Shown here in pieces: positions 3,884 through 56,160 of a stretch of DNA of 64,000 nucleotides. The stretch is taken from IMG/VR virus record IMGVR_UViG_3300035670_000008, positions 152,564 to 216,563 of that record; one strand, written 5' to 3'. Position numbers and translations under genes: made by a program. Position 1 is the stretch's first letter; each line of letters starts with the position of its first letter. The notes beneath the pieces were generated by a model, which ran no database searches, had not been told where the DNA came from, and worked only from the letters and a program-made list of their open reading frames with translations.

Positions 3884-3918
3884 ATAGACATTTTCAGAAA
3901 TCTATGGAGTAAGAAGAT

Positions 3919-4686: not shown

Positions 4687-4705
4687 ACCCCCGATAAGAA
4701 GGATT

Positions 4706-4739
4706 GAACGCTCTATGCTAGAAATAGTATAGAGCGTTC
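4706..4739 (+). terminator. Long stem-loop after the tube gene (probable terminator or attenuator)
   Basis: GAACGCTCTATGCTA-GAAA-TAGTATAGAGCGTTC, a 15-bp stem with GNRA loop; U-tract is weak. Confidence 0.6.
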
Positions 4740-4756
4740 TACTATATAGAGGCCTT

Positions 4757-8092: not shown

Positions 8093-8095
8093 TTC

Positions 8096-10616: not shown

Positions 10617-11721
10617 GTTCACCGAGATTCAAGAAAGAACACTCTACAGTATGGCGCCGTTGCCAGTGTCTCCCTTTGCTCAGCGGGCTGGCTACACAAA
10701 CCAGAGTCGGTATAAGACTGATCGAGACCGGGTACTGAGTATTACTTTAGGTCAACTAGAGTTGGTCGGGCTGCAAGAGCGGTACTTGGATAGCTATAAC
10801 GAGACAGACCAACCCTCAGTGCTACAATATCGAGACTTGATGCTAGCGAAGGCAATTGAGGCCTCTCTGTATAACACGCAGTTTGTGAATGGGGTCAACG
10901 GGGAGCTGACCTGGCACGCAAAGAAGACCTGGAACTACTACAGCTACAATGACATCTGGGAATACATTATGCCTGGGGAGATAGTAGACTACCCCTATCT
11001 GTGGGCGGGGTTAGGGTGTCCAGCTTACTACTTCTACTACTCCAAACCCAACCCAGAAGAAGGTCTAATTCGCTCCTACGAACGGCTGCTCACTTTCTTC
11101 TGGGCGACCTTTGCTTGTAGCCACAACACTCAAACTCCCCGCCAACGACTCCAGTATTTAATCGATTCGATTGGTCTAACTTCAGTATTTCTTAAAGAGC
11201 TTAATCTTTATAACGACCGGCTGGTGCCAACCGCTTATATGAAACGGAATAACCTGCCGAAGTTAACCCAACTAAAGCCCGCGTTGTTATTAAATCAATA
11301 CGAGTCAGAATACTTCGCTATCGTCTTAGAAGATGTTGAATCTGACTTTAAAGACCAGTTCAGTAAAGCTACCAAAGCTATTCTCTCGATGGCAAAGCCA
11401 GGAGGCTTAAGCTATATAGCTCAATTCTTTATCGTGGAGGCATATCTCAAGATAGCCAAACTTCTAACCTTAGACCGTAGCTACGGTCAGCTCCCTTTAA
11501 CCACCTACCTAAACTTAAACACTTTAGACGTTATCTCTAACTGTCAGGCTGTCGTTAGGTTGTTGAGCTTAGCTAACGACGCCTATACCATTCTGAATTG
11601 GTACGATAACAAGAAGAACGAGTTTCTAGAAAAGAACTTGTTGTTGTGGTTAGCTAATACCCCCGACCAAACCTTAGCCTACGACTCCGAATACAGACTG
11701 ACTAACTTTGATGGCAACTAA
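10609..11721 (+). CDS. Hypothetical virion-module protein
   Basis: Long ORF; ATG at 10609 (MPKFTEIQ) preferred over the TTG at 10471 because it couples to the upstream stop. Confidence 0.65.
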   Translation: MPKFTEIQERTLYSMAPLPVSPFAQRAGYTNQSRYKTDRDRVLSITLGQLELVGLQERYLDSYNETDQPSVLQYRDLMLAKAIEASLYNTQFVNGVNGELTWHAKKTWNYYSYNDIWEYIMPGEIVDYPYLWAGLGCPAYYFYYSKPNPEEGLIRSYERLLTFFWATFACSHNTQTPRQRLQYLIDSIGLTSVFLKELNLYNDRLVPTAYMKRNNLPKLTQLKPALLLNQYESEYFAIVLEDVESDFKDQFSKATKAILSMAKPGGLSYIAQFFIVEAYLKIAKLLTLDRSYGQLPLTTYLNLNTLDVISNCQAVVRLLSLANDAYTILNWYDNKKNEFLEKNLLLWLANTPDQTLAYDSEYRLTNFDGN

Positions 11722-37800: not shown

Positions 37801-40800
37801 CACGCGATAGCTGCGACTTTAGGAATTGGACAGACGGCGACCAAGCTATTCATGGGCGGTAATGTCAACGCGGCTTCCTCTATTAATGCTTCGGTAGAGG
37901 GCGCGGTATCCTTCCTTGGAATTAAAGCAGTCATCAACCGAGCGATTGGTAAGCGTCGGTTTGATAACGTCGTACTGAACCGGTCTACTAGAGATGACGG
38001 GAGAGTTCTAGATTCAGAGCCCGTGGCTAACGTCGTTAAACAATCAGCAGGCCCGACTGGCTCGAAGAGTAGCTTCGAGGATGATTACTTAACCAACCCA
38101 TATATGTTGGAAGCCGGCGCTACGATTGGTGCCTACGCGCTTATCACTTTGGGTTCTAGTTACCTGGCGGCTAGAGCTACGAAGAAGGCAGCCTCTATTG
38201 CTTTAAACAAAGCCAAGCAACTGCTAGAAGAAAGGAAGCTCGCGGCTGAGCCTTCTGTTACGACGACAGCGGCGGAGCCAGCTGTTGCTGAGCCGTCTCC
38301 TTTGGCGTCTCCCGAACCCGCGGTTAGCGCAGATACCTCGGCTAAGGGAGTTTCTACAGTAATGGACTTATATGAGGAGACCGCTCCAAGTCCCCTTGCC
38401 TCAGCTGAACCACCAGTCGGTAAGCCTAGTTACAGCGCGGACACCTCAGGACAGGGTGTGTCGGCTGTGCTTGACCTGTATGAGTCTATTACTCCACAGA
38501 CTCCTGCTCCAGAGACAGTAGCTAAACCGATCGTTACTGCAGAGCCGCCGTCTACTTCTAGTCAGGACGTTATTAATAAGGTGACTAATCCCGAGCCGCC
38601 TACTCCTACACCAACTGTTACAGCTCCTCCATCTCCTGAACCGACAGGGCCTAGTAAGCTTGAGTCACGCAAACCACGCTTTGGTCAAATTGACCCTAAC
38701 TTAAAAGGTAATATATCAACTGGTAAGAAGCAGGCATTAACCGCCGGTAAATTCCTGTTAGGGACTTCAACTGATGACCATCTATCTAGTAGTCTTGTTT
38801 CATTGAATAGAGCTATTAACCAAGTTCAAAATGCTGGCTTTGCTAGTTTAGGCCCTGCAGGAGCCAGTCGTTACGGACAGTTAATGGGTGAGCGGCAGGC
38901 TATCTTATTGGAGCAGCGCCGTCGGCAGCAACAAGCTAGCCAACAGGTCATTGAAACTGTTGCTGCCGAACCAGAGATTACACCTAAACCTTTAGAGCAG
39001 CCTGCTCCGCCGCAGCCGACCAAGCCTATTCCTACTACTCCTAAAGAGCCAACTGTCGAGCCATCTTTGTTGGACACGACTAAAGCAGCTGACTATTTAC
39101 CAGTACCTATCTATGAATCGTTTACTGACACATCTTTCTTAAGTAGAACTTCTGGTAAACAAACTACTTTAGGCAGACAGAAGTTCCTTATGGCGGGTGG
39201 GTACATGAGTACGAATAGTTACTCTAATGTACCGGAGTTAGAGCGGGCTGGCGGAAAGGATAGTGCTGATATTAATAAAGGTGACCTAAGTATTAGAGTT
39301 AGTATAAAGGCACAGACTGTAAAAGACGGTAAACGTGTTGATATAGACAATCCTTATATCAACATACAACATATATGGAATATAGCCAACGATGAATACG
39401 GACGGGGTGGGGTCATTACCCGTGACTACATATTAGAAATAAACTCTTTTCCTGGGGCAACGGTAGAAGAGAAAGCTAAAAGTGCTTACGCTTACTTCGA
39501 GCAGCAGTACGCGCGCCGGATGCAGGAACTTCGTAGCTCCAATCCAGCAGCTATCGATAAATACATGGCGGATGCCGGCCACGGCGATTATCTTTCTTGG
39601 GATTATAACAACCGGCAGGGTGATGAAGGGTTCTTGTTTAAACATGAAATTAATCCTACAGGAGCAGTTGGTAAAGTTACACCTCCGGTAGAAAACCCTA
39701 CTCTACCTAAACCCCCACAACCACAACCAACAAAAACGTCGGATAGGACGGCATTACTAAATATATATGAAACATCCACTAGTGGTGTAGAAGGTTCTGG
39801 TAGTAGAGATTACGATTATACTCTCCCACGCGGTTATGGGATTACGTATGGTAATAAACCTAGTGGACTAGACAAGGACAAGTTTGTTGAACGTTTAGAT
39901 GTAGATTTTAAAGAAAGAGAAGGTGGTTATAGAAAAATAGACCTTTTAGGAACTAAGGTTGAGGCTAGAACTGCGGCTTTAGCATTAAAACCTATGGAGG
40001 TGTTTAATACTTCTGGTATTTACACACAAACCAAAAATGGTAAACAGCTTAAAGTTGCTTATGTCTCTACTATGTTAGGGATGGCTTCTGATGTCAGCGA
40101 AAAGGACGCTCGGAAGATGGTTTATCATAGGGATTATTTTGCTGAAATCAAGCCCGAACAAGATGAGCAAGTTGTTTTACGGCAACTGCAAGCTCAATAT
40201 GTTGAAGCAGTTGAGTGGGCTAAGATTAACGCTCCTGACCAAATTAAAGATGGGCATCTAGTCCCACGTCCTGAAGGGAAATTTGTTCCTATTGATTTAA
40301 GTAATGTAGGAGGTTTGCATACTACAATCCCACAGCAAGATGGTGGTTTCATCAAACCTGTTCCGTTACCAACTAGTGCGGAGCGTCAGGTCTTAAGTCA
40401 ACAGCGCGCCGACCGGGTGCGCCGTGGGCAAGCTAAAGGCATTGATTACCAAATGATGCTGATGGACATGGTCTATGGCAAGGCTAAAGAAAGTGTCACC
40501 GGCGTCATTAGCAAAGCTAAGGAGATTAGTCAATCCTTCGTATCTGGAGTCGGTCGAGCCGTCCGGGGTACAGCTAACCAAGCCTGGGACGGTTGGAGTA
40601 TCTTCGACCGATTAGAAGGCCTCGACGCTCGCTTTGGCAACCAAGGTATGGGTGGTGGGGCTGGATTCTGGACTCGCTTTGGTCAAAGCGCTAAGTACGA
40701 ACTTAGCGGCAGGGGGATCGTTGAAGGGGGTTTTGGTATCGGTCGAAATGCTCAAACCGGCAAGGTTGGTATCCAAGGTAAAGGCGGCGCGATGGCCCTT

Positions 40801-43800
40801 GCTGGCATGGGGCTACAACTAGCTGACGATATCCTGACGTTAGACTGGAGCCGCAAGAACTTTGCTAAGTCGTTAGGTACGGTAGCGAAGAATCAAGCCA
40901 CGTCGTTAGCTGCTGGGGTAGCCTTCGGGTTGGTGACAGCTGGGCTGGGGGCCCTAGCGTTGTCTTCTGTACCGGCGTTAGCTGCGCTGGGGATTGTGGG
41001 TAGCGCTGTGTTGATGGGCTATGGAATCTACTCGCTAGCTGACCAAGGCTTCAAGGTTGGTGGTAAAGCCTGGGAGAAATTCGTCCTGAAGCGGAAGCGC
41101 ACAGCAGAAGAGCAGAAGGTTTACGAGCAACAGAGCCAAGTTCTATCGATGGGCTTTGGAGTTGGGACTTTTGTTTACGCAGGCTACAACCAAATTAAGA
41201 GTCTTCAGGGCGCCCGTCGGGCGGCTAGCGTAGTCAACCAAGCACCGGTCGTTCCGACTGTTCCCGTTCGCCAGGCAGTAGATGTAATAGACGACGTAGC
41301 TCCGAGAACTCCTGTCAACCCAACTAGAAGCGGGTCGGTGCTGAAGACCGCGGGTAAAGCCGTCAAGGTAGCCAGCACAATGTACAGTGTCTATCAGATT
41401 GGTACCGGGCTACACCAAGCTTTCACTGGTAAGACTGAACAAGCAAAAGACCAAGGTCGTCGTCAAGCCGTTCGGGAAATCGGTGGATTGATTGGGATGC
41501 GAGCTGGTGCCAAGGTCGGGGGCTACGTCGGTCGTGCTGGCGGCACGGCTGTGACAGCTAACCCCACCGGGGCTATCGTTGGTGACGTCGCTGGCCAAGC
41601 GGTCGGTGGATATATTGGCTACCAAGGCGGCTCTAACATCGCTGAGCAGATGTACGACAACGCGATGGAGATGATGTATGGCAAGATGAACCAACGCCAG
41701 CGTCAAGAGGCAGTTGATAAGGAAGTCAAGCGCCGCTCAGCTGGCAGTCAATATAACTTGGAGGCTATCCAAGGTAAAGAACAGAAGGTCGCTAAACAGA
41801 TAGAACGCCCGCGGGCTTGGTGGCGGTCGGACGAGGAAGATACTCCCTGGTGGAAGAAACTACTGCAAACCATTGGCAAGGGTGTAGAAGCGTTAGGTAA
41901 CTTTCTAACTAGGACTAAGAACGCTGCCTTAGACGCTGCTGATGCTTTAAGTAATTGGGCAACAGGCGGCGTTCCACTTAGTTCTGACGCTTTAATCAGT
42001 GGTAATTTAAGAGCGGCTAACAGTCGGGGTACATCTATTATCCAGGCTGCTCAAATATTAGGCATTAATCCCTTAGACTTGGCCACTATTGTTGAATTTG
42101 AGTCAGACGGAAACCCCCATATTCGGGGAGGGGCTGGCGGTAACTATATTGGGTTGATACAGTTTGGACCTAACGAACGTAAGAAATATGGTTATCACTC
42201 CAAGATGACTTTTGAAGAGCAAATGTTAGGGCCCGTCGTTAACTACTTTAAAGACCGCTTTAAATCGGCTGGGATGTCGACGGAAGGGGCTTCGTTAGAG
42301 GATTTATATACCACAGTGTTAGCAGGTAATCCTAAGGCTAACCGAGGTTCTAGGGATGCTTTTGGTACTAGTCCGCGCTCAGGTGTTCGTAAGATGACGG
42401 CTCCGGGGGCCGACCGGGATATCGCTCTACAGAAGTACTTTATTGTTGATGGTACACTTAACGCCCCTACAGGGTTCCAAGTTCCTAGTGGTGCTCGTTG
42501 GGCTAGTTCGATGGGCGTAAGAGATGCCAAGACATTGGCTCAATTACCTCAACGAACGGGAGGTAATGCTTATGGAATGAGAATTCATCCTACTCAAGGT
42601 AGACGTAAACTTCACGCTGGGGAAGACTACGCATTTCCGATTGGAACTCCGTTATCGACAGCGACGCCGGCTGTGGTTGTGTTTGCTGGTATGTTAGGTA
42701 ATGCAGGCAACACTGTTGTTCTTAGACACTCAAACGGCACCTACACTCGTTCGTTACACATGGATAAGATTTCGGTCAAGGCAGGTGACGTCTTGATGCC
42801 CAACCAAATGTACGGCACGGTTGGCACTACTGGGGATTCAACAGGCCCTCACCTCCACTTTGAGGAAGGGTCGTGGGATAGTAAAACCAATAGGTTTAAA
42901 GCCAAGCCCCCAACTGACTTAGGCCGTAAGTCAATTCAGGTTGGAGGTAAAACAGTTAAGGTTCAGGCAACACCGCCGACTAGCCCACAGGATTACTTCA
43001 ACAAGGTTGCTCCTATTCAGTCTGGTCAAACCCAATCTCAACAGATTATTACCCGTACTGAGCGGAAGTCTACTAAAGTAGGCGGGGTTACTCACTATGC
43101 CTACACCAACACCACCCAGAAGCTAGTGACAATAGCTGACAGTCAAGTGATCGGTAAGCAAAAACAACAGCTGAACGAAACAACAGCTAAACAAGTCAAT
43201 AAGATGCTAGCTGAGTTGAAGGCTGCAACCGGCGTTGACCTTTGGATCCTCTCTGGATATCGCAGCGTTGAGTATCAGCAAGAGCTATGGAATAAGAAGA
43301 AAAGAGAAGGTAAGAGCGACGCGGTTATTGCTAAGTCATTAGCTATACCTGGCTTTAGTGAACACCATACTGGAGACGCTTTTGATATTTCGCTGCAGGG
43401 CCAAGCGAACCTAACTGCTGAGCAGTGGGCCAGTAATCCAAAGTTAAGGGAAGCGCGCGCTTGGTTAGATAAGAACCAATCTAAGTACGGATTTGAAACT
43501 TCTTTCTTACCAGGCAATAAAGAGAACGTTGTGTCTGAGCCTTGGCATTTACGGTATGTAGGCCCTGGCTCTGAGTACGCCCGTCAAATCAAAACTAACG
43601 TAACGACGAGTCAGCAGGTTATTAATCAAGTCCAAGGCGGAACGACCACCCAGCAGGTTGCGTTAAACCAACAGCAACTCACCCAAGGTATTGAAGCCAT
43701 CCGTAAAAAATACGGTCTACAGTCTATCTATGCCCAAACTAAAGGTGGGGTAACTGTAGGTACAGTTGATAAGAATAAACCAGCGGTGGTTTCTAGCGCT

Positions 43801-46641: not shown

Positions 46642-47105
46642 ACTTTAGTCTTTGTCTTCTTAGTAGTAGCGCCGGCCATGAACTTAGCGGCTCGGTCAGA
46701 TATACCCAACTGCTCGGGAGTCAGATTACCTCTAGTAAGTGCGTCGGCAATGTTCTGCTCGCGGGGAATCCATTGCATACTCCAACTCTCGAAGCAACTA
46801 AGTAGGTCTTTTGCGTAGGTGAGGGCAATATACAGATGAGCTTGTTTGGTATTCCAGTCACCGTTGGTGCATTTAACCACTAAGTCGCTATCTCCGTAGA
46901 TTTCGATGTCTCGAACGCCATGCTCGATAGCTTTGGTTAGCCCTAGGATTAGCCCACCGAACTCAGCGCTGTTGTTGGTGCCTGTGCCCATGAACTGGGA
47001 GTATTCGTGTTTTGTATCGTCTGGGGTAATTAAGACAGCGCCCGCGGTGCAATGGCCCGGGTTACTCGGTGCGGCGCTGCCATCAAAGAATAGAATTGCT
47101 TTCAT
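46638..47105 (-). CDS. rnhA: Ribonuclease HI
   Basis: FFDGS...NPG, TNNSAEF, YGDSDLV, WIPREQN.AD, supplying the DEDD catalytic residues. Confidence 0.92.
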   Translation of the reverse strand: MKAILFFDGSAAPSNPGHCTAGAVLITPDDTKHEYSQFMGTGTNNSAEFGGLILGLTKAIEHGVRDIEIYGDSDLVVKCTNGDWNTKQAHLYIALTYAKDLLSCFESWSMQWIPREQNIADALTRGNLTPEQLGISDRAAKFMAGATTKKTKTKV

Positions 47106-48713: not shown

Positions 48714-48751
48714 AAAAAGACCTTGGGTAGAGAAGCCACCAAGGTCTTTTT
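48714..48751. terminator. Bidirectional intrinsic terminator closing the Ubl operon
   Basis: AAAAAGACCTTGG-GTAGAGAAGCCA-CCAAGGTCTTTTT, with A-tract and T-tract flanks. Confidence 0.8.
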
Positions 48752-48753
48752 GT

Positions 48754-49461
48754 TTAAAGGAACCGACCTTCAGTCGCCAGGGTTAATTGAGCGCCGTTAT
48801 AGTTGAGCCTAAATGGCAACGGCTTGTTTTCTAGCAGCGCGTAGACAACTTCATTAGTCATTAATGCACTGGCAAAGTTGGCGTTGATTAATTGAGGGCT
48901 GGACACGGCTTCGTAGCCGCAGCTACCACGGGGCTGGTCGCTAGGGCGCTCGTAGTTGGTAGCTACGTCAAAGGGGTGAACCGGACGAAGTTTACCCTCC
49001 ACGCGGGAGTACCATAAGCAGGTAGCAGTATGGAAGTCGTTACCTGGTAGGACGCAGGCGAAGTCCAATACTGGGTCGAGGTCGTCTAGGTCTTTGATAA
49101 CTTCGTTACGGGCGGACTCAGAGTCAACGGCTAAGACTACCAGCACCGCGCCGGGTTCGTCGCAGTGAGTAGTGTACTCTTCCAGCTGGGTACGGAACTT
49201 GTGCCGCCTTACGAAGTCTGGTACCGCGCTAATATTACAGACGGACTCCAGTCTTTTAGCAGCAGCGGCAGCTTTGTTTATACCTACGAAGGCAGGGTCG
49301 AATAATTGCCTTACACTATTAGACGATTCATACTCGTCGCCGTCATACACACAGACGTTCTTGGTGCCTTCCTTGTGATAGGCTAACAGCCGGACTAAAG
49401 GCTCTAATAGAATCGAACCGGTTCCACCGGCGCCGATGACATGACAGCTAGAAAATTTCAT
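48754..49461 (-). CDS. E1-like ThiF-family ubiquitin-activating enzyme (PRTRC-ThiF type)
   Basis: VIGAGGTG nucleotide-binding loop, YDGD.YESSN..RQ, G.NKA, AVD...AR, candidate catalytic GSC and QLINAN. Confidence 0.88.
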   Translation of the reverse strand: MKFSSCHVIGAGGTGSILLEPLVRLLAYHKEGTKNVCVYDGDEYESSNSVRQLFDPAFVGINKAAAAAKRLESVCNISAVPDFVRRHKFRTQLEEYTTHCDEPGAVLVVLAVDSESARNEVIKDLDDLDPVLDFACVLPGNDFHTATCLWYSRVEGKLRPVHPFDVATNYERPSDQPRGSCGYEAVSSPQLINANFASALMTNEVVYALLENKPLPFRLNYNGAQLTLATEGRFL

Positions 49462-50392
49462 TCTTGGCTCCTAAGATTTCAAATTTGGATTTAGTGGATA
49501 AGGTTTTTGAGTAAAGCACCAAGTCGCGGCAGGTCGTTAAGTACCCGCTGGGAGTTTTCTTTATCCAGCCGACCACGTAGGTTTTATCTGGTTTAGGCCG
49601 GTAGTGGTAACTTAAAGGGACTGTCTCGAACAGTTTCCCACGGTCAGCGACCACCATCGCTTGTGGTCTTTTGGTAGCGACTTTCAGAGTTAGGTCTGGA
49701 GCCCGGAAGGAAGTGGCTTCTTCTAGACTAAGGTGCGGCGGGGTGGGACTGGTTCGCTGGGCATACTCTTCATGGTCGTAGCTACTAAGTAGAAGTTCCG
49801 TGCTGCGGTCGTTTGTCCCCTGGGCCAGGTCTCGGTTAAAGTTGCTGGTGAAGAACGTATTGAACGCTTCCAGGTGGTCACGCGGCCGTTCTGCCCTACC
49901 CCAACAAATTTCACCATCGCGGTAAACGTTAGCTAACCGGTAGGGCACGTAGGTGCCGTCTTTGGTAACCGCAAATAGTTTCCAGCTTCCATGGTATATA
50001 GACATCAAAGACTTCGGAACGTGGATAGTCTTTGTGCCGTATAAGTGCTCTTCAACTGTGCATCCCAACCTGCATTTGTTGTCAAATACGCGGAGTGTGC
50101 CACCATCGCAAAGCTCACACTCGTCCATGAAGGCTCTCCTATGTGTCTGCAGTACGGAGAATTTGTAATCGGCCCGCTCGAAGCCAGTTGTCTTGATAAA
50201 CAACTTAGTAATGTCATCTATAGGTTTGTAATAGAAACAACCTTTGCAGGTCTCTTCAAACGAGTCTTGGCTGTTATAGCGGATGTCAATGCTGAAGGGG
50301 TCAAACAAGCAGGAGATTTTTATCCTGTTGCTTTTGTTGATACTAAGAATGGCCCCCGCCGCGATGGACGGGAACCGAAGCACTTTGAACAT
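49448..50392 (-). CDS. Prokaryotic E2 family D-like conjugating enzyme (copy 2)
   Basis: PYRLANVYRDGEICWG...FNTFFTSNFNRDL; Cys near 49905. Confidence 0.75.
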   Translation of the reverse strand: MFKVLRFPSIAAGAILSINKSNRIKISCLFDPFSIDIRYNSQDSFEETCKGCFYYKPIDDITKLFIKTTGFERADYKFSVLQTHRRAFMDECELCDGGTLRVFDNKCRLGCTVEEHLYGTKTIHVPKSLMSIYHGSWKLFAVTKDGTYVPYRLANVYRDGEICWGRAERPRDHLEAFNTFFTSNFNRDLAQGTNDRSTELLLSSYDHEEYAQRTSPTPPHLSLEEATSFRAPDLTLKVATKRPQAMVVADRGKLFETVPLSYHYRPKPDKTYVVGWIKKTPSGYLTTCRDLVLYSKTLSTKSKFEILGAKNEIF

Positions 50393-50393
50393 A

Positions 50394-51584
50394 TCAGTAT
50401 AGGCAGGTGTTGATGATGTCTTCAGCTACAGGCATATAGACGTTCAAGTCTAGCTTCTGTGCTAACAGCGCAGCTAGCAACTCTTGACCGCGGGGACAAG
50501 CCATTAGAGCGTCGGCGTAGATATCCAAGTTGGTTAGAATATCTTTCAGTGTTTCCTTCTCTTCACCGTTCAGGTCAACGGTTCGCTGGTCACGGAAGTT
50601 CTTGAACTCAACTTCGTGCTTGAGTTCATGTTTGATGTCCTTCTCGTAATCGCGGAACTTATTAGCCTGGTTGGTGTAGGTATAGTTCCCGTACCAGCCG
50701 GCATTGTAGTAGGTGTCGTCCCAATCATCCCACTCGTCGATACCATAGAGCTGGTCGCGGGGCATGAGGGTAACATTCTTCGGGCCTTTGTACTTGGTAA
50801 CCCAGGAGTTAGCGCCGACGCCACGATAAGAGTAAGCAGTAGCTCTGGTAACGTAGGTGCTGGCTAACGAAGAAATCTCTGCTACCTTGCTGTCGTAAAT
50901 AGTCATCACCTTGCATTTGTCGTTCGAGCCGACGGTGGCTACGCCATCCAGGTTTAACAACAAGTCAGGCCGGAAGATATACCGCTTTTTGTTTAAGACG
51001 ATGGAGCAGCAGATGTCGAACGAATGCGGGGTAATCATTCCGATGGTGCAGTGCATCCCCGGTACGCCCAGTTCGCCTTGGTCATCCCGCCCGCTCCAAA
51101 AGGCGCTCATTGAGTTGTGAGAATGGATCGACCCGGAATGACAGTAGCCTTCCGGTGGAAATACCGTGTATTCTTCCCCTGTAAATAAGTCGCAGCTGTG
51201 GGTCGTAACGGCGTCTACAGTGACGCTAGTCACCGACTGCATCGGCACGACGACTTTCCACTGGCTGGGGTCATCTACTCCGCGCAGCAGGCACACTTGC
51301 ACTTCGGTGCTCCCGACGACGTAGGCGGAGCCATTGGTCGACATGTAGCTACGGAAGAAGGTGACAATGCCCTGGAGTAAGTGGAAAGGTAGACGGTCGA
51401 ACTGTTCTTTTAGCCACATGTAATCGACTTCGGCGGGCTTGTCGACTCCTTTCGGGTCTTTGATAGGCACGTAGTATTCACCCCAGTAGTTACTCTTCTG
51501 GAGTTTGAAGCAGCCGTCCTTCGTCCGAATGAACGGGGCTTTCTCTGTTTCTTTCACCGGTGCGGTGGTTAATGTTTGAGTCAT
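50394..51584 (-). CDS. JAB/JAMM metalloisopeptidase (Prok-JAB/PRTRC-A type)
   Basis: TEV...VVVPMQSVT...GSIHSHNSMSAFWSGRDD (E...HxH-x7-S-x2-D). Confidence 0.88.
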   Translation of the reverse strand: MTQTLTTAPVKETEKAPFIRTKDGCFKLQKSNYWGEYYVPIKDPKGVDKPAEVDYMWLKEQFDRLPFHLLQGIVTFFRSYMSTNGSAYVVGSTEVQVCLLRGVDDPSQWKVVVPMQSVTSVTVDAVTTHSCDLFTGEEYTVFPPEGYCHSGSIHSHNSMSAFWSGRDDQGELGVPGMHCTIGMITPHSFDICCSIVLNKKRYIFRPDLLLNLDGVATVGSNDKCKVMTIYDSKVAEISSLASTYVTRATAYSYRGVGANSWVTKYKGPKNVTLMPRDQLYGIDEWDDWDDTYYNAGWYGNYTYTNQANKFRDYEKDIKHELKHEVEFKNFRDQRTVDLNGEEKETLKDILTNLDIYADALMACPRGQELLAALLAQKLDLNVYMPVAEDIINTCLY

Positions 51585-51600
51585 AGTTTAGTAGGCTCCG

Positions 51601-53166
51601 TTAGAAGGTTGCTAGTTGCTCTTGCTGCTCTTGCTGCTGCCGCTCTCTCATCAACTGTTTTAGTTCAGCCATGGTGAAATACCCCAGTCCGCTTACAGAG
51701 TTGATTTCATTAGCTTCTAGACCAGTCTCTTCTTGAATTAGTTGGCAGTACATCAAGGCCTGCTCTAAGATGTAATGCTGTTTTTCTCTTGACGACCATT
51801 CCTCAGATACTTCAGAGTCCACAGTTGGAACCTCAGCGGCTTCTAGTTTTTTCTGTAGCCGCTCCTGGATTTTGTCAGTCTTTGCTGCGTTTGCTTTAAG
51901 TTTGTTGAGGTCGATAACCTTTAGGTCACTCAACTTACCATCAGCTAAGAAACGAACCAATGCTTTCCCCGTTGAGTTATTCACTTTGTACACAAACGCC
52001 AGGCTGAAGCTAATGTAGTTTGTGAAAGAGAATCTAACAGAGCAGTCGTAGACTGGGTACGGTCGGAACTTTAAGGACATTTCGTTCTTTAAAGAGCCGG
52101 TTACAGGTAACAAAGGAGACTGGCACATCAATAGCCCAATTACGTCGTTGTCGGCGTAGTCACAGTCGTATGAGCCGTCGTAAAGAGTAAAGCCTTTTTC
52201 CAGGTGGTTTAGGAAACTCTCGTTGGCGGTGAAGCGGTAGTAGTGTTCGACCTTGGGGTGACGGTCGTCGTCGCTCGGGTTATACACCAAAGACGGGGTT
52301 CCTTCATCGTCGTCTTCGTCTTCGTACTCCCGGTTTTCGGAGTCGTACGGCGCGTACGAATCGTTGTACTCATGGGGAACCAAGTCGTAGTTGAAGGAGC
52401 TACTGAAGTAAGTAGCGTAGGCACCGCGGGGGTCGTAGGGACGTCCCTGCTCACCCCAGCAGACGTCTCCATCGCCGTATACGTTACCCAACAAGTAAGG
52501 TACCCCGATAGCTGTGACAGTCTTTACTTCTTGGTCGTTGAAGGTCTTTACTTTTTCCTCTATGTCCCGTATGGCGAAGACCTTAAAGTTACCACAACCA
52601 ACTTCTTCGGCGTTGATACGTCTTAAATCTACTGTGCTCTGCCACAGTAAGTTAGGTACTCTTAGATTCACGGCGGCAGAGAAGGTCTCTCCAGCCCGGC
52701 ATGGCTTACCATCTCTCAGGCTTTGCTCTTCTTCTATGCCGAGTAGGTGGCTATTCGACAGACCTGGGCAAGCGTTGGGTAACTTACGGAAGTATTCTTG
52801 GTAATAGGGGGTGAAGTCTACCCAACCCAACATTGCCCTGATTTGGTCTTCTTTTGAGCGGTTGAGCAGGTAAGTTCTGCGGGAATAGAAGCTGCCAGTT
52901 GTGCTGCGAAGGGTTCTATTAAAGAACGCTTCATCGTCGTTGAGTTTCTTTGTTAAATGGGTTTTGATGGCGTCCGCTGCTTTGCTACGAGCGTTCTGGC
53001 TGCACTGTCTACAGCGGTTTGCAGTGATATCACAGAGGAGTTCGTCGTCTAGCAGGATTTCTTTCTCTTCTGCTTCAGTGACGTTATAAACCACCAGCGA
53101 GCTGTTATTCGCTAGCACGTTAACAAAGACAGTCTTAGTGCCTTTCGGGAAATAGAAAACTTTCAT
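51601..53166 (-). CDS. Prokaryotic E2 family D-like conjugating enzyme (copy 1, 521 aa with extensions)
   Basis: PYLLGNVYGDGDVCWG...YATYFSSSFNYDL; Cys near 52460. Confidence 0.75.
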   Translation of the reverse strand: MKVFYFPKGTKTVFVNVLANNSSLVVYNVTEAEEKEILLDDELLCDITANRCRQCSQNARSKAADAIKTHLTKKLNDDEAFFNRTLRSTTGSFYSRRTYLLNRSKEDQIRAMLGWVDFTPYYQEYFRKLPNACPGLSNSHLLGIEEEQSLRDGKPCRAGETFSAAVNLRVPNLLWQSTVDLRRINAEEVGCGNFKVFAIRDIEEKVKTFNDQEVKTVTAIGVPYLLGNVYGDGDVCWGEQGRPYDPRGAYATYFSSSFNYDLVPHEYNDSYAPYDSENREYEDEDDDEGTPSLVYNPSDDDRHPKVEHYYRFTANESFLNHLEKGFTLYDGSYDCDYADNDVIGLLMCQSPLLPVTGSLKNEMSLKFRPYPVYDCSVRFSFTNYISFSLAFVYKVNNSTGKALVRFLADGKLSDLKVIDLNKLKANAAKTDKIQERLQKKLEAAEVPTVDSEVSEEWSSREKQHYILEQALMYCQLIQEETGLEANEINSVSGLGYFTMAELKQLMRERQQQEQQEQLATF

Positions 53167-53182
53167 AGTTTAGAAAGGAAGT

Positions 53183-53219
53183 AAAAAAAGAGAAGACCCC
53201 GCGTTAGCAGGGCCCTCTC
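53183..53219 (-). terminator. Intrinsic terminator between Ubl and the first E2 gene
   Basis: Minus strand GAGAGGGCCCTGC-TAAC-GCGGGGTCTTCTC followed by T7. Confidence 0.7.
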
Positions 53220-53239
53220 AGTAGTAACAACTCTTTTGA

Positions 53240-53584
53240 CTACGCGCCTTTGGTGTCCGCGCTGGCAGAGGCGGTGACTAGTTCACCCGGTTTGGGGACG
53301 TAGTCTTTGGAGACGTAGGTGGTCTGAATCTTGAAGTTCAGCCGGCTGACGTCGCTGACGCCAATGGAGCCACGGTACTCCTGCACGATTTGCTGCAGGG
53401 TTTTGGTGCCGTCCACCGTAGCCACGAACTCTTCGGTTCCGTAGCGGACGATGATTTGGGACTCAGGATTGAACTGCTCTTCAGTGAACTCACCTTCGTC
53501 GAAATCGGGCTCGAAGTCCGCGAAGAGTTCTTCTTCGGGAGCTTCGGTGGAGTTAACGGGAGCGTTGGTTTCGTAATCAGACAT
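53240..53584 (-). CDS. Ubiquitin-like (beta-grasp) modifier protein with acidic N-terminal extension
   Basis: Beta-grasp pattern IIVRYG...ATVDGTKTLQQIVQEY...LNFKI...YVPKPGELVT; C-terminus DTKG-A; first gene of an E2/JAB/E2/E1 operon; GAGGA Shine-Dalgarno. Confidence 0.75.
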   Translation of the reverse strand: MSDYETNAPVNSTEAPEEELFADFEPDFDEGEFTEEQFNPESQIIVRYGTEEFVATVDGTKTLQQIVQEYRGSIGVSDVSRLNFKIQTTYVSKDYVPKPGELVTASASADTKGA

Positions 53585-54751: not shown

Positions 54752-54910
54752 GGTGACCTAGTTGGGTAACAAGGTTAGGTCAGACCCCGTCATTCATACC
54801 GCAACAGCGGTACGTTTGAAAGCAACCACTTGGTTGGCATTTGTTGTTTGCTCATCCGAGCAGGCTTCATCGTAGTGCCATCCTTTACCAATCGAAACCG
54901 TTGCATCCCC
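54732..54910 (-). ncRNA. ssrA: tmRNA coding piece (5' half of a permuted two-piece tmRNA)
   Basis: Begins GGGGAUG-CAACGGUUUCGA (tmRNA 5' end and D-loop analogue); tag ORF 54838-54794 reads ANQVVAFKRTAVAV*; pairs with the piece at 55064 onward; 3' end approximate. Confidence 0.85.
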
Positions 54911-54911
54911 G

Positions 54912-54987
54912 TGGTACAGGGTACAGGAGTTGAACCTGTCTAAGCGGAATTATGAGTTCCGTGCCTAAACCGCTCGGCCAACCCTGC
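54912..54987 (-). tRNA. tRNA with CAU anticodon (probably Ile2/lysidine type, otherwise elongator Met)
   Basis: GCAGGGU/ACCCUGU acceptor stem, anticodon arm CGGAA-CUCAUAA-UUCCG, T-loop GUUCAAC, encoded CCA; lacks the initiator GGG/CCC anticodon stem. Confidence 0.9.
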
Positions 54988-54991
54988 AAGG

Positions 54992-55062
54992 CACCTCCTG
55001 AAGGAATCGAACCCTCGTATTCGGTTTTGGAGACCGACGTTCTACCACTGAACTAAGGAGAT
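54992..55062 (-). tRNA. tRNA-Trp (CCA anticodon)
   Basis: AUCUCCU/AGGAGGU acceptor stem, G73 discriminator, anticodon arm UCGGU-CUCCAAA-ACCGA, T-loop GUUCGAU; followed by CCU rather than CCA. Confidence 0.92.
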
Positions 55063-55063
55063 T

Positions 55064-55130
55064 TGGTGGAGATGGGGAGAGTCGAACTCCCGTCTTGGCA
55101 ACCAGCCGCTACGACTATCCCAGTTTAAAG
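55064..55130 (-). ncRNA. ssrA: tmRNA acceptor piece (3' half of a permuted two-piece tmRNA)
   Basis: Ends GAC-GGGAG-UUCGACU-CUCCC-CAUCUCC-A-CCA; CAUCUCC pairs with GGGGAUG giving G3.U70 and A73; 5' end uncertain. Confidence 0.85.
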
Positions 55131-55160: not shown

Positions 55161-55559
55161 TTAATTAGATTTAGCTTCTAGTATTTTAGTGGCTTTTGCA
55201 GCTAGCTTCTCAAAGACCTCCGCGGGGAGACTTTCTTGGCAGACAATCATAAAGACTTTACGGAACTCTTTAGTGCTGCTGTAAATAGCTGCGTTGGACC
55301 TTTTTCTTTCTCTTAGCCGTCTTTCCTTTTCGAGTTGCACCCGCTTAAGGCTGGAAATCCGGTAGCGTTTCGCTGACTTTGCTCGGGCTTCCCATTCTTT
55401 GTCGTTCTGCCCTCTTACTTCAGCGTATTCCAGGTGTGTATTGATGGTAGCTATCTCTTCGTGTAGCTGCAGTTCTAAGTCCTCCAGCTCCTCTTCTGAT
55501 AGCTCTTGAGTGTTTAATGTGTTAGGGGGCTGTTTTGACAGTCCACTTAAGTTATCCAT
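55161..55559 (-). CDS. Hypothetical coiled-coil protein
   Basis: 132-aa helical ORF overlapping the upstream stop. Confidence 0.65.
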   Translation of the reverse strand: MDNLSGLSKQPPNTLNTQELSEEELEDLELQLHEEIATINTHLEYAEVRGQNDKEWEARAKSAKRYRISSLKRVQLEKERRLRERKRSNAAIYSSTKEFRKVFMIVCQESLPAEVFEKLAAKATKILEAKSN

Positions 55560-56160
55560 GGGTTTTAAGGTGGTCTAAGAACAAAGCTAAGCAGCTAACT
55601 AAGTCTTCTAGTCCCTTAGCAAGCTTACTGTCTAACGCCTCTTCGATGGCTTCTCTTTCAACTTCACACCACAAGTCTTCTACCTGACGGTACAACTTAT
55701 CATCGTCAGATACTATGTAGGACTCGTATAATTTTGGATGGTTACTCTTTAACCACTCGTCCTTGATAGTTGAGTATTCTTCTTCTACTTCTTTAACGAG
55801 TCCGTTTCTATACACTGCTTTGCCGGTGAAGTCGCATCCAGGTTCGTCGTAGGTGAGTACAATAACAGCGTCAGGGAATTGTTTAGAGATAGCGTTAAAC
55901 CCTGCTGAAGGAGGCGACCAGGGAGTCCAACAGGATATCTCTACACAGTCGTCGCTGCTGGAGTAAGTGGGTTCTTGCAAGTCCCATTTAGTCCCCCAAT
56001 TATCATAACGCCAGTCGACAGTATCTTCTCTGGGCGGCGGCACGAAGATGCTTAGTAACCCAAAATCTTCTTTATAGTTTTTGAGGATGCTATCAAACGT
56101 GCGTTTCTGCTCGGCAGTTAGGTTGTAGATGCGGATGGAGTTGTTGCAATAGTTAGGCAT
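55552..56160 (-). CDS. DUF1281/YubB-like ferredoxin-fold protein
   Basis: MPNYCNN...DWRYDNWGTKWD...TPWSPP...YDEPGCDF.G. Confidence 0.75.
   Translation of the reverse strand: MPNYCNNSIRIYNLTAEQKRTFDSILKNYKEDFGLLSIFVPPPREDTVDWRYDNWGTKWDLQEPTYSSSDDCVEISCWTPWSPPSAGFNAISKQFPDAVIVLTYDEPGCDFTGKAVYRNGLVKEVEEEYSTIKDEWLKSNHPKLYESYIVSDDDKLYRQVEDLWCEVEREAIEEALDSKLAKGLEDLVSCLALFLDHLKTHG

What the first reader, a model, noticed from the sequence alone, without database searches (positions are those of the whole stretch)
48754..53584. Complete phage-encoded ubiquitin-like conjugation operon: Ubl - E2 - JAB - E2 - E1
Seen: five co-oriented genes, the four enzyme genes tightly coupled (gaps of 16, 1 and -14 nt), closed by a terminator. 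They encode a beta-grasp protein ending TKG-A, two proteins with the NVxxDGxVCWG...FxSxFNxDL motif, a JAMM protease with intact E/HxH/S/D, and a ThiF-type E1 with GxGGxG and a candidate catalytic Cys. Known: this matches prokaryotic Ub-like systems (Prok-E2 family D, PRTRC-like cassettes); bacterial E1/E2/JAB systems such as Bil and CBASS Cap2/Cap3 act in anti-phage defence, and Bil conjugates a Ubl to phage tail proteins. No sulfur-transfer biosynthesis genes and no ParB are adjacent. Inference: the phage carries its own protein-tagging pathway, to modify host proteins, counter host Ubl defences, or sabotage co-infecting phages. This is the strongest candidate for an undescribed system here.
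Basis: partly seen in the sequence, partly recalled or inferred. Interest (0 to 1): 0.92.

Follow-up and report, generated by a model that had tools for sequence, protein, structure and literature searches.

The report
Phage ubiquitin-like tagging operon, PRTRC-related
A large, probably cyanobacterial, phage carries a five-gene operon with every part needed to attach a small ubiquitin-like protein to other proteins; it is a divergent relative of the uncharacterised bacterial "PRTRC" cassettes and may be a virus's own protein-tagging system.

Summary
On the minus strand lie five co-oriented genes: Ubl (114 aa), E2a (521), JAB (396), E2b (314) and E1 (235). The junctions are 73, 16, 1 and -14 nt, with a terminator hairpin after E1. 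I found a second strong hairpin directly after the Ubl gene; its position, though not its sequence, is conserved in four related loci.

Component identities:
- **Ubl:** the predicted structure is a SUMO-like beta-grasp. It ends in a conserved TKG plus one variable residue.
- **JAB:** E94, H154xH156, S164 and D167 are invariant in six phage homologues.
- **E1:** it has a ThiF adenylation core, and Cys181 is invariant in 17 of 17 phage homologues.
- **E2a and E2b:** they belong to Pfam Prok-E2_D, with Asn-x7-Cys invariant in 95 homologues. A confident E2b model matches no solved fold, so the E2 fold is only weakly supported.

All five genes are under purifying selection, and the two E2s evolve fastest. 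The cassette recurs, with shuffled gene order, in about ten large phage-like metagenomic contigs. Simpler E2-JAB-E1 cassettes occur in other viral contigs and in Vibrio phage D69.

It fails the PRTRC cut-offs and lacks ParB, PRTRC_D and PRTRC_E. It is not Bil, CBASS or Bub. I call it a new variant of a predicted but untested kind. Conjugation is inferred and the targets are unknown.

The parts
53240..53584 (-). Ubl gene (114 aa). Residues 1-42 form a disordered acidic/aromatic tail (15 D/E, 0 K/R). Residues 43-113 form the beta-grasp core, ending T111-K112-G113 and followed by one removable residue, A114.
   Evidence: AF2 core pLDDT about 87 with a bb-a-bb-b topology. Foldseek top hits are SUMO/Smt3, NEDD8, ISG15 and a bacterial Ubl (8tyx_A), at E 2e-4 to 1e-3 and TM 0.6-0.7. 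The protein is 80% identical in L006, and TKG plus one variable residue (A/N/C/Y) is conserved. Tail composition.
53246..53248 (-). Codon of Gly113, the predicted conjugation and adenylation site. The Ala114 codon at 53243..53245 is the predicted JAB-removed residue.
   Evidence: G113 is invariant while the residue after it varies or is absent in relatives.
53183..53219 (-). Intrinsic-terminator-like hairpin (13 bp, 8 GC) with a T7 run between the Ubl gene and E2a; a likely attenuator that gives excess Ubl transcript.
   Evidence: One search lists it as the top site. dG is -27.6 kcal/mol with z -3.7. An equivalent hairpin plus U-run, with a different sequence, follows the Ubl gene in L002, L006, L010 and L011.
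51601..53166 (-). E2a (521 aa), a Prok-E2_D-type protein with Asn228...Cys236, a putative Cys4 metal site (C52, C55, C133, C156) and a long C-terminal extension of unknown fold.
   Evidence: It shares a 42-aa active-site block with E2b (E 8e-13). Orthologues in L006 and L010 hit Pfam Prok-E2_D (5e-8), although the window protein itself gives no Pfam hit. It is the fastest-evolving gene of the operon (31% identity to L006). Cys positions.
50394..51584 (-). JAB/JAMM metallopeptidase (396 aa) with E94, H154-S-H156, S164 and D167 (codons within 51084..51305), plus N- and C-terminal extensions.
   Evidence: All five catalytic residues are invariant in six phage homologues. Sequence matches are weak: Pfam Prok-JAB 0.047 and PRTRC_A 0.0015. 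Homologues in L008 and L005 hit Prok-JAB at 1e-8 and 4e-4. A profile search against PDB finds AMSH-LP/STAMBP at only E 0.1, aligned on the HxH...S..D block.
49448..50392 (-). E2b (314 aa), a Prok-E2_D protein with Asn155 and catalytic Cys163 (motif codons 49826..49930), a Cys4 site (C49, C52, C95, C107), and N- and C-terminal beta-rich domains.
   Evidence: Pfam Prok-E2_D 5e-6, 26.8 bits against a cut-off of 25. N155 and C163 are invariant in 95 homologues, 72 of which hit Prok-E2_D. The Cys4 residues are conserved wherever the insert exists. The AF2 model has pLDDT 91.3 but no significant fold match.
48754..49461 (-). E1 (235 aa), a single ThiF/MoeB-type adenylation domain with G10xGGxG15, D40-G-D42, R51-Q52, K63, D113 and candidate catalytic Cys181 (codon 48919..48921). 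It has no CxxC zinc motifs and no second domain.
   Evidence: Pfam ThiF 3e-14. PRTRC_ThiF 6e-17 but below cut-off. Conserved residues. Cys181 is invariant in 17/17 phage E1s. The start overlaps E2b by 14 nt, as also in L006 and L011.
48714..48750 (-). Terminator-like hairpin with a T5 run immediately after the E1 stop codon; the end of the operon.
   Evidence: Sequence read. dG -18.6 kcal/mol, z -4.2, and 0 of 200 shuffles fold as well.

Best explanation
This is a phage-encoded ubiquitin-like protein conjugation cascade, distantly related to the bacterial PRTRC / 'class 6d' Ubl-JAB-E1-E2 cassettes.

Proposed mechanism (every biochemical step is inferred, none was tested):
1. The Ubl gene is transcribed in excess, because a conserved hairpin terminator stops part of the transcripts before the enzyme genes.
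2. The JAMM peptidase removes the single residue after Gly113.
3. The small, presumably homodimeric, ThiF-type E1 adenylates Gly113 and takes the Ubl onto Cys181 as a thioester.
4. The Ubl passes to Cys236 of E2a or Cys163 of E2b. No E3 is encoded. These two large, zinc-module-bearing, fast-evolving E2 paralogues most likely choose two different sets of targets themselves.
5. The Ubl ends up on a target amine, carrying its conserved acidic/aromatic tail with it. The JAMM enzyme probably also reverses or edits conjugates.

I think the targets are most likely host proteins, modified during infection for takeover or counter-defence. That last point is the weakest part of the explanation.
For: - **Catalytic residues.** All four enzyme classes plus a Ubl sit in one operon with their catalytic residues intact and invariant in homologues: JAB E/HxH/S/D; E2 Asn-x7-Cys in 95/95; E1 nucleotide-binding residues and Cys181 in 17/17.
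- **Ubl fold and C-terminus.** The Ubl is a SUMO-like beta-grasp by AF2 and Foldseek. It ends in an invariant Gly followed by 0-1 variable residues, the hallmark of a processed, C-terminally activated modifier. The same [ST]KG ending occurs in a bona fide PRTRC_C protein from a viral contig (L021, 7e-19).
- **A JAB role beyond processing.** L033 keeps a JAB although its Ubl already ends in Gly.
- **Selection.** dN/dS is 0.06-0.21 for every gene.
- **Conservation.** The component set is kept while the gene order shuffles in about ten large phage-like contigs. Two E2 paralogues recur in L006, L010, L011, L032 and L034.
- **Evolutionary rates** fit E2s acting as specificity factors in a conflict. 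Identity to L006 is Ubl 80%, E1 77%, JAB 60%, E2b 42%, E2a 31%. Independently, a diversity-generating retroelement targets PRTRC protein B in a Phocaeicola prophage (bioRxiv 10.64898/2026.10.01.756045).
- **No sulfur-transfer or cofactor genes** and no ParB among the neighbours.
- **Terminator.** The hairpin after the Ubl gene is conserved in position in five loci.
Against: - No biochemical step is shown.
- The E2 fold is not confirmed. The high-confidence E2b model has no significant Foldseek hit in PDB or BFVD. The family profile finds no PDB sequence. hhalign against canonical UBC reaches only P = 0.006, against 0.12-0.6 for controls.
- The window's own JAB and E2a are below the Pfam thresholds.
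- The Ubl shows no detectable sequence relationship to PRTRC_C or to any PDB entry.
- Nothing identifies a target, the timing of expression or the host.
- Only 64 kb of a 216-kb genome was examined, so partner genes elsewhere, such as sulfurtransferases, are not excluded.
Confidence: 0.62

Rival explanations
1. It is a conjugation cascade, but it is aimed at the phage's own proteins, for example modification or maturation of virion or replication proteins. This would be analogous to the Ubl (TAPI) plus JAB (TAPK) pair in lambdoid tail assembly.
For: The operon abuts the structural module, converging on the 6943-aa virion-type giant gene. A phage Ubl+JAB pairing in tail assembly is precedented (PMC1779556). 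The Ubl and E1 are highly conserved, as expected for a housekeeping phage function.
Against: The operon lies on the opposite strand from the structural genes, within a block of small non-structural ORFs. In relatives it sits beside RNR, helicase or RNAP genes rather than structural genes. Rapid divergence of both E2s fits changing external targets better than co-evolving self targets.
Confidence: 0.17
2. It is a defence or exclusion module carried by the phage. Like bacterial Bil, it would tag proteins of competing, co-infecting phages, or it would act as an abortive system.
For: The characterised bacterial Ubl-E1-E2-JAB systems (Bil, type II CBASS) are anti-phage (PMC11601596, introduction). 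Large phages often carry inter-phage competition genes (my own knowledge). Fast-evolving E2s fit an arms race.
Against: PADLOC gives no hit for the Ubl, the E2s or the JAB, and only generic E1-domain similarity to Cap2. The E1 architecture differs from BilD, which has tandem IAD-AAD-CYS domains (PMC11601596). No defence-island regulators such as CapW or CapH/CapP are adjacent.
Confidence: 0.12
3. It is a sulfur-carrier system. The Ubl would be adenylated and thiocarboxylated by the ThiF-like E1 to donate sulfur, for example for tRNA or DNA thiolation. The JAB would expose the C-terminal Gly, as in CysO/Mec+ systems.
For: The E1 is closest in sequence to ThiF/MoeB-type enzymes. Cys181 aligns with the position where ThiF/MoeB-type enzymes carry a conserved Cys (plus my own knowledge). 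tRNA genes lie 1.3 kb upstream. The L005 Ubl domain weakly hits Pfam ThiS.
Against: Two conserved E2-type proteins with an invariant Asn-x7-Cys have no role in sulfur transfer. The Ubl ends KG, not GG, and Foldseek ranks SUMO-type modifiers above sulfur carriers. No rhodanese, cysteine desulfurase, ThiG/MoaE or PP-loop thiolase is found in the neighbourhood.
Confidence: 0.05
4. It serves a replicon maintenance or establishment function, as canonical PRTRC cassettes are annotated ('ParB/ThiF partitioning cassette') on plasmids, ICEs and prophages.
For: The weak best hits of the E1, JAB and E2b in NCBIfam are all PRTRC families. PRTRC is described as a putative partitioning cassette in PMC13366799.
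Against: There is no ParB, PRTRC_D or PRTRC_E gene nearby. All PRTRC scores are far below the cut-offs. The partitioning label is itself unstudied (PMC13366799). The carrier is a tailed jumbo phage, and no integrase or partition gene was found among the window proteins I scanned.
Confidence: 0.04

Closest known systems
PRTRC system (NCBIfam TIGR03735-03741 plus ParB) = Iyer, Burroughs & Aravind 2006 class 6d 'Ub-like, JAB, E1-like, E2-like' operon (PMC1779556)
   Same: It has the same four component types in one operon. The best, though sub-threshold, NCBIfam hits of the E1, JAB and E2b are PRTRC_ThiF, PRTRC_A and PRTRC_B. E2b is in the Pfam family Prok-E2_D. The Ubl ends in the same [ST]KG motif as a bona fide PRTRC_C protein. 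Both are carried by mobile elements. The function of PRTRC is untested (PMC13366799).
   Different: All scores are far below the family cut-offs. There is no ParB, PRTRC_D or PRTRC_E. There are two E2 paralogues of 314 and 521 aa rather than one of about 230 aa. The order is Ubl-E2-JAB-E2-E1 rather than Ubl...E2-JAB-E1. The Ubl is 114 aa with an acidic tail and one residue after the Gly. The conserved His after the catalytic Cys reported for class 6d is absent. The carrier is a jumbo tailed phage.
Bil (BilABCD) anti-phage Ubl conjugation system
   Same: It comprises Ubl + E2 + JAB/JAMM + E1 with no E3, and the E2 is proposed to recognise targets directly (PMC11601596). A bacterial Ubl from a Ubl-deubiquitinase complex (8tyx_A) is among the structural matches of the Ubl.
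   Different: [quoted passage not shown] Here the E1 is a single 235-aa ThiF-like domain. There are no PADLOC hits for the Ubl, E2 or JAB. Here the system is encoded by the phage, not the host.
Type II CBASS Cap2/Cap3
   Same: The E1 Rossmann region gives weak hits to the Cap2 'E1-E2' models (4e-7). A JAB partner is also present.
   Different: Cap2 is an E1-E2 fusion that conjugates the CD-NTase itself. Here the genes are separate, a dedicated Ubl is present, and there is no CD-NTase or effector nearby.
Bub (6E/DUF6527) operons
   Same: They are bacterial Ubl/E1/E2 operons with Ubls that carry variable N-terminal domains (PMC11601596).
   Different: Bub E1 and E2 lack catalytic cysteines, work through oxyesters and use a DUF6527 serine protease. 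Here both cysteines are invariant and the peptidase is a JAMM enzyme.
Eukaryotic SUMO pathway
   Same: The best structural matches of the Ubl core are SUMO1/Smt3. Like SUMO, the Ubl has a disordered N-terminal tail and a C-terminal extension that must be removed (my own knowledge). The E2 active-site spacing Asn-x7-Cys equals the UBC HPN-x7-C spacing.
   Different: There is no detectable sequence homology of the Ubl. The E1 is a minimal ThiF-type domain, not a heterodimeric multidomain E1. The peptidase is a JAMM enzyme, not a Ulp/SENP cysteine protease.
Lambdoid/T1 tail-assembly Ubl (TAPI) with JAB (TAPK) (PMC1779556)
   Same: A phage-encoded beta-grasp Ubl with a C-terminal Gly, paired with a JAB peptidase.
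   Different: Those systems have no E1 or E2 and sit inside the tail gene cluster. Here there is a full activation and transfer set outside the structural module.

Membership tests
PRTRC system (NCBIfam) | ThiF-family protein scoring above the PRTRC_ThiF (TIGR03736) cut-off | tested here: not met
   61.7 bits against a cut-off of 144.75; it is nevertheless the best hit.
PRTRC system (NCBIfam) | PRTRC_A (JAB) and PRTRC_B (E2) proteins above their cut-offs | tested here: not met
   18.1 vs 101.8 bits and 16.8 vs 131.45 bits, covering only the active-site blocks.
PRTRC system (NCBIfam) | PRTRC_C Ubl (about 66 aa, ending TKG) | tested here: inconclusive
   There is no HMM hit, and hhalign against viral PRTRC_C-like proteins gives 1.4% probability. 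The TKG C-terminus is shared with a true PRTRC_C protein (L021, 67.7 bits).
PRTRC system (NCBIfam) | Adjacent ParB-related gene and PRTRC_D/E genes | tested here: not met
   No such hits in the flanking ORFs with Pfam or NCBIfam.
Iyer 2006 class 6d operon | Ubl, JAB, E1-like and E2-like genes in one operon | tested here: met
Iyer 2006 class 6d operon | E2 with an absolutely conserved His C-terminal to the catalytic Cys; an extra alpha-helical protein | tested here: not met
   No conserved His column in 95 homologues. No additional conserved gene in the operon across relatives.
Pfam Prok-E2_D (PF14460) | Score above the gathering threshold | tested here: met
   E2b scores 26.8 bits vs 25. The E2a orthologue in L006 scores 33.3 bits, although the window E2a itself gives no hit. 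72 of 95 family members hit, the best at 4e-28.
UBC/E2 superfamily | Active-site Asn followed after 7 residues by the catalytic Cys | tested here: met
   N155/C163 (E2b) and N228/C236 (E2a); invariant in 95/95.
UBC/E2 superfamily | UBC fold (helix, four-strand meander, active-site loop, helices) | tested here: inconclusive
   The AF2 secondary-structure order fits: strands 118-150, a loop carrying N155 and C163, then helices 173-182, 198-204 and 207-213. Foldseek finds no significant PDB or BFVD match. hhalign vs UBC gives P 0.006 with the active site in register, against 0.12-0.6 for controls.
JAMM/MPN+ metallopeptidases | E...HxH...S..D metal and catalytic motif | tested here: met
   E94, H154, H156, S164 and D167 are invariant in six homologues. 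Whole-domain HMM scores are sub-threshold for the window protein.
Ubiquitin-like beta-grasp modifiers | Beta-grasp fold with a flexible C-terminus ending in Gly | tested here: met
   AF2 plus Foldseek hits to SUMO, NEDD8, ISG15 and a bacterial Ubl. This is a predicted, not an experimental, structure. Gly113 is invariant.
ThiF/MoeB/E1 adenylating enzymes | Rossmann GxGxxG, Arg finger, Mg-binding Asp; a conserved Cys after the core | tested here: met
   Pfam ThiF 53.2 bits vs 28.1. Conserved residues and Cys181.
Bil (BilABCD) | E1 with tandem inactive/active adenylation domains plus a Cys domain | tested here: not met
   The E1 is 235 aa with a single domain. Feature definition from PMC11601596.
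Type II CBASS | Cap2 E1-E2 fusion next to a CD-NTase and effector | tested here: not met
   E1 and E2 are separate genes, and no CD-NTase is found in the neighbours.
Bub (6E) | E1 and E2 without catalytic Cys; DUF6527 protease | tested here: not met
   The Cys residues are invariant. No DUF6527 hit. Feature definition from PMC11601596.
ThiS/MoaD sulfur carriers | C-terminal GG and linkage to sulfurtransferase or cofactor-synthesis genes | tested here: not met
   The Ubl ends KG(+1). No such neighbours are found. The rest of the 216-kb genome was not examined.

The most novel reading that the evidence does not exclude
This would be the first virus-of-bacteria ubiquitin-like conjugation system used offensively. 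On this reading, the phage covalently tags host proteins, such as defence or DNA-handling proteins, using two rapidly diversifying E2 'warheads'. The Ubl's conserved acidic/aromatic N-terminal tail, which resembles a DNA mimic or an SSB tail, would be a cargo delivered irreversibly to the target. In a distant relative (L005) the tail is replaced by Rho_N/SAP nucleic-acid-binding modules. The so-called E2 may also represent a structurally new Cys-dependent transferase architecture, since its confident model matches nothing solved.
Probability: 0.25. Interest if true: 0.9.

Novelty: new variant of a known kind. Interest (0 to 1): 0.68.

Why it matters
Bacterial ubiquitin-like conjugation (CBASS Cap2/Cap3, Bil, Bub) has so far been shown only as host defence against phages. 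The PRTRC / class 6d cassettes were predicted in 2006 and have no known function. This operon shows that large tailed phages maintain, under purifying selection, a complete and compact version of such a cascade: five genes in 4.8 kb.

Several features make it experimentally tractable:
- a small single-domain E1;
- a Ubl with a defined processing site;
- two E2 paralogues whose divergence suggests that they choose the targets.

If it conjugates proteins, it would give a first function for the PRTRC-like class. It would also reveal a viral counterpart to host Ubl immunity, and could supply a minimal orthogonal protein-tagging toolkit. I found related cassettes in isolated Vibrio phages (the D69 group). 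Those phages offer a culturable entry point.

Tried and rejected
- **DNA search against GenBank phages.** blastn with the 4.8-kb operon found no match.
- **PHROGs.** No family for the Ubl, E2a, JAB or E2b.
- **PADLOC.** Only generic E1 similarity, so this is not a catalogued defence system. PADLOC dates from 2023 and may lack Bil and Bub models.
- **PDB by sequence.** E2b and the JAB gave nothing. The E2 family profile gave nothing. The JAB profile gave only AMSH-LP at E 0.1. The Ubl profile gave only noise.
- **Ubl vs PRTRC_C-like proteins.** hhalign found no relationship.
- **Word-indexed homologue searches.** E2b and the Ubl returned only 2-3 close relatives each.
- **Metagenome scan with the Ubl.** It re-found only the L006 contig.
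- **GTDB genome scans.** Patterns from the Ubl and the E1 found no relative. These scans are pattern-limited, so absence is not proven.
- **Fold searches of the E2b model.** No significant match in PDB or BFVD. I could not crop the model to the putative UBC core.
- **E2 divergence by region.** I tested whether it is concentrated in the non-catalytic domains. It is not; the N-terminal, core and C-terminal regions diverge similarly.
- **Neighbouring ORFs.** Pfam and NCBIfam revealed no partner: no ParB, E3/RING, sulfurtransferase or regulator.
- **Rejected as misleading.** The weak NCBIfam hit of the Ubl to an enterotoxin model (16.5 bits against a cut-off of 720) is noise.

Full report
**1. What is in the sequence**

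The finding lies on the minus strand. One search lists five co-oriented ORFs:
- 53584..53240, 114 aa (here Ubl);
- 53166..51601, 521 aa (E2a);
- 51584..50394, 396 aa (JAB);
- 50392..49448, 314 aa (E2b);
- 49461..48754, 235 aa (E1).

A hairpin followed by five T lies directly after the E1 stop codon (sequence; dG -18.6 kcal/mol, z -4.2).

It has a 13-bp stem with 8 GC pairs and a T7 run at 53219..53190. It is the top terminator-like site in the 10-kb scan, with dG -27.6 kcal/mol and z -3.7.

**2. The carrier is a phage**

The window is part of IMG/VR contig UViG_3300035670_000008, which is 216.5 kb long. The plus-strand block upstream encodes a tail sheath, a baseplate wedge and tail fibres. 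It also encodes a 6943-aa ORF whose orthologue carries Peptidase_M23, VanY and DPBB domains.

The only sheath relatives in GenBank phages are the Microcystis Ma-LMM01 group and a Microcoleus phage, at 27-29% identity. Rfam finds a permuted tmRNA next to two tRNAs 1.3 kb upstream of the operon. A cyanobacterial host is therefore plausible but not shown. No GenBank phage matches the operon at the DNA level.

**3. Identity of the parts**

*E1.* Pfam ThiF scores 3e-14, and the best NCBIfam hit is PRTRC_ThiF at 6e-17, below its cut-off. The nucleotide-binding and catalytic residues are conserved: G10xGGxG15, D40-G-D42, R51-Q52, K63 and D113. Cys181, in an S-C-[GA] motif, is invariant in all 17 phage-contig E1s that I aligned. 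The protein is a single 235-aa domain with no CxxC zinc motifs.

*JAB.* The window protein only grazes Prok-JAB (0.047) and PRTRC_A (0.0015). E94, H154-S-H156, S164 and D167 are invariant in six phage homologues. Some of those homologues hit Prok-JAB convincingly, for example 1e-8 in Vibrio phage D69. A profile search of the PDB aligns the HxH...S..D block with AMSH-LP, but only at E 0.1.

*E2 proteins.*
- E2b passes the Pfam Prok-E2_D threshold (26.8 bits vs 25).
- E2a gives no Pfam hit itself, but it shares a 42-residue block with E2b at 55% identity (E 8e-13). Its orthologues in L006 and L010 hit Prok-E2_D.
- A profile search of 1.84 billion representative proteins found 528 relatives at E <= 1e-3.
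- In an alignment of 95 of these, Asn155 and Cys163 are invariant, and G160, G165 and N186 nearly so. Of the 95, 72 hit Prok-E2_D, the best at 4e-28.
- The motif N-V-Y-x-D-G-x-I-C has the spacing of the UBC signature HPN-x7-C.
- Four further cysteines (C49, C52, C95, C107) are conserved wherever that insert is present. This suggests a Cys4 metal site. E2a has equivalently placed cysteines.

*The E2 fold is the weak point.* AlphaFold2 with the 95-sequence alignment gives a confident model (pLDDT 91.3, pTM 0.85). Its central part has the right order of elements for a UBC core: strands at 118-125, 128-133, 136-142 and 148-150; a loop carrying N155 and C163; then helices at 173-182, 198-204 and 207-213. 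Against this:
- Foldseek finds no significant match in PDB or BFVD, and no UBC protein in the top 50.
- The family profile finds no PDB sequence.
- As an independent test, I collected 78 canonical UBC proteins from giant-virus contigs using the UBC active-site pattern and ran hhalign against the E2 core. The active sites align in register, with P = 0.006. Unrelated control alignments gave 0.12-0.6.

I therefore treat 'E2-like Cys enzyme of family Prok-E2_D' as established and 'UBC fold' as only weakly supported.

*Ubl.* There is no family hit. AlphaFold2 on a six-sequence alignment gives a core (residues 43-107) at pLDDT about 87, with a beta-beta-alpha-beta-beta-beta order. Foldseek then returns SUMO1/Smt3, NEDD8, ISG15, ubiquitin variants and a bacterial Ubl (8tyx_A), at E 2e-4 to 1e-3 and target TM-scores of 0.6-0.7.

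Residues 1-42 are predicted to be disordered. They contain 15 Asp/Glu, no Lys/Arg and six aromatic residues. A motif (L20 F21 D23 E25 P26 F28 ... F33 E35 F38 P40) is invariant in five orthologues.

The C-terminus is A-D-T-K-G followed by exactly one variable residue: A, N, C or Y in four loci. More distant relatives end [ST/Q]-K-G plus zero or one residue. A 68-aa protein upstream of a viral E2-E1 pair (L021) is a bona fide PRTRC_C (7e-19, above cut-off) and ends G-T-K-G. This ties the TKG ending to that family, even though profile comparison detects no relationship between the two Ubl groups.

**4. Conservation and evolution**

The same five genes in the same order occur in four other places:
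- IMG/VR 3300047551_002099, at 94-97% identity;
- an NCBI metagenome contig of 104 kb (L006), again followed, after two or three genes, by RNase H and the giant gene;
- a Logan contig (L010);
- an ENA contig carrying intein-containing RNR genes (L011), with a rearrangement: E2 - 175 aa - Ubl - JAB - E2 - E1.

E1-based searching added four more loci:
- L031, from the same metagenome as the window: Ubl-E2-JAB-E1.
- L032, an 859-kb contig: Ubl-E2-E2-JAB-E1.
- L034: Ubl-JAB-E2-E2-E1.
- L033: a Ubl, with a JAB-E1 pair close by.

The component set, including the two E2 paralogues, is thus kept while the gene order shuffles.

Simpler E2-JAB-E1 cassettes occur in 11 further IMG/VR contigs of 17-340 kb (L016-L020 and L024-L026 with a JAB; L021, L022 and L027 as E2-E1 only). 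Two more (L015, L023) differ or are cut at the contig end. They also occur in the isolated Vibrio phages D69, D181 and D148, where the genes are annotated as hypothetical. No relative was found in 185,579 GTDB species genomes using the Ubl or E1 patterns, but these scans are pattern-limited.

Against the 94-97% identical relative, dN/dS is:

| Gene | dN/dS |
|---|---|
| E1 | 0.056 |
| Ubl | 0.10 |
| JAB | 0.11 |
| E2b | 0.19 |
| E2a | 0.21 |

. All five genes are maintained by selection.

Against L006, the identities are RNase H 85%, Ubl 80%, E1 77%, JAB 60%, giant-protein C-terminus 53%, E2b 42% and E2a 31%. The same ranking holds for L011 and L031. The divergence of the E2s is spread over the whole proteins rather than confined to the flanking domains.

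The hairpin plus U-run after the Ubl gene is present at the same position in L002, L006, L010 and L011, with unrelated stem sequences. This argues for function. Most simply, it would be an attenuator that gives more Ubl than enzyme transcript.

**5. Most likely mechanism**

All biochemical steps below are inferred, not shown.
1. The JAMM peptidase exposes Gly113.
2. The ThiF-type E1 adenylates Gly113 and forms a Cys181 thioester.
3. The Ubl moves to Cys236 of E2a or Cys163 of E2b.
4. With no E3 encoded, the E2s select targets directly, as proposed for Bil (PMC11601596).
5. The JAMM enzyme probably also deconjugates, because L033 keeps a JAB although its Ubl already ends in Gly.

The fast evolution of both E2s fits a role as specificity determinants in a conflict. 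So does an independent report that a diversity-generating retroelement mutates PRTRC protein B in a Phocaeicola prophage (bioRxiv 10.64898/2026.10.01.756045).

I favour host proteins as targets. Phage self-modification, inter-phage exclusion, sulfur transfer and replicon maintenance are rivals, scored in their own section. The acidic tail may be a delivered cargo. In L005 the Ubl instead carries two Rho_N/SAP modules, and in L011 a Rho_N protein lies beside E2a. This hints at nucleic-acid-related targets, but it is speculation.

**6. Comparison with known systems**

The nearest described kind is the PRTRC / class 6d cassette (PMC1779556). Formal membership fails:
- all three NCBIfam scores are far below their cut-offs;
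- ParB, PRTRC_D and PRTRC_E are absent;
- the conserved His reported after the catalytic Cys is absent;
- there are two enlarged E2s rather than one.

It is also not one of the characterised systems:
- not Bil, because of the single-domain E1;
- not type II CBASS, because there is no E1-E2 fusion and no CD-NTase;
- not Bub, because both cysteines are conserved and the peptidase is a JAMM enzyme rather than DUF6527.

**7. Novelty**

Canonical PRTRC cassettes have been noticed in prophages by annotation, with the function stated as unstudied (PMC13366799). The comparative jumbo-phage survey I checked does not mention E1, E2, JAB or Ubl systems (PMC7824862). My literature searches found no description of a phage-encoded Ubl conjugation cascade.

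I rate this a new variant of a known but functionally uncharacterised kind, and of high interest if conjugation is demonstrated.

Noticed in passing
window 54794..55116 (-), with tRNA genes at 54915..54987 and 54992..55062 (-): Rfam finds a full-length permuted (two-piece) tmRNA (RF04321, 86.8 bits against a gathering score of 47). It spans tRNA-Met and tRNA-Trp, as if the two tRNAs were nested in its intervening segment. ARAGORN also calls a permuted tmRNA with the tag ANQVVAFKRTAVAV. A phage-encoded permuted tmRNA may hint at the host lineage.
   Followed up: no
window 25810..46641 (+): A single 6943-aa ORF. Its L006 orthologue (6860 aa) carries Peptidase_M23, VanY and DPBB domains. It converges on the RNase H gene (46638..47105, -) with a 4-nt overlap of their 3' ends. 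It is probably a giant virion-associated or ejected cell-wall-degrading protein.
   Followed up: no
L008 3394..4185 (Vibrio phage D69, OZ195729.1): A 263-aa 'hypothetical protein' upstream of an E2-JAB-E1 cassette contains three tandem repeats, each ending T-G-T-K-G. This is a polyubiquitin-like precursor in an isolated phage, and presumably a natural JAB substrate.
   Followed up: partly
L005 8758..9366 and 9825..10622 (IMG/VR 3300026544_000002): A distant cassette (E2 of 777 aa, an unknown 685-aa protein, JAB, E1) sits between RecD2-like helicase and RNAP beta-prime genes. Its Ubl is fused to two Rho_N/SAP modules and ends G-T-K-G plus nine residues. A second ThiF-like gene follows.
   Followed up: partly
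L032 (JGI 3300032132, 859-kb contig), 2836..9894: A Ubl-E2-E2-JAB-E1 cassette lies on an 859-kb contig, directly downstream of Peptidase_M24 and SprT-like protease genes. The same M24 + SprT-like pair precedes the related cassette found through P0182. Eukaryotic SprT/Wss1 proteases are SUMO/Ub-linked (my own knowledge), so this association may be functional.
   Followed up: no
window 49448..50392 (E2b model m48524959a502): This is a very confident AlphaFold model (pLDDT 91.3, pTM 0.85) of a three-part protein: an N-terminal beta sheet plus a helical Cys4 module, the catalytic core, and a C-terminal beta-rich domain. It has no significant structural neighbour in PDB or BFVD.
   Followed up: partly
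window 55552..56160 (-): A 202-aa protein with a DUF1281_C / Api92-like ferredoxin-like domain (7.5e-10). It matches two PHROGs of unknown function.
   Followed up: no
L031 (JGI 3300035670, contig Ga0310129_0000197, 97.5 kb): A second, different phage-like contig from the same metagenome as the window carries a one-E2 version of the cassette: Ubl 102 aa - E2 500 aa - JAB 386 aa - E1 222 aa, with the E1 60% identical to the window's by BLASTP (62% by tblastn). The system therefore circulates among co-occurring phages.
   Followed up: partly
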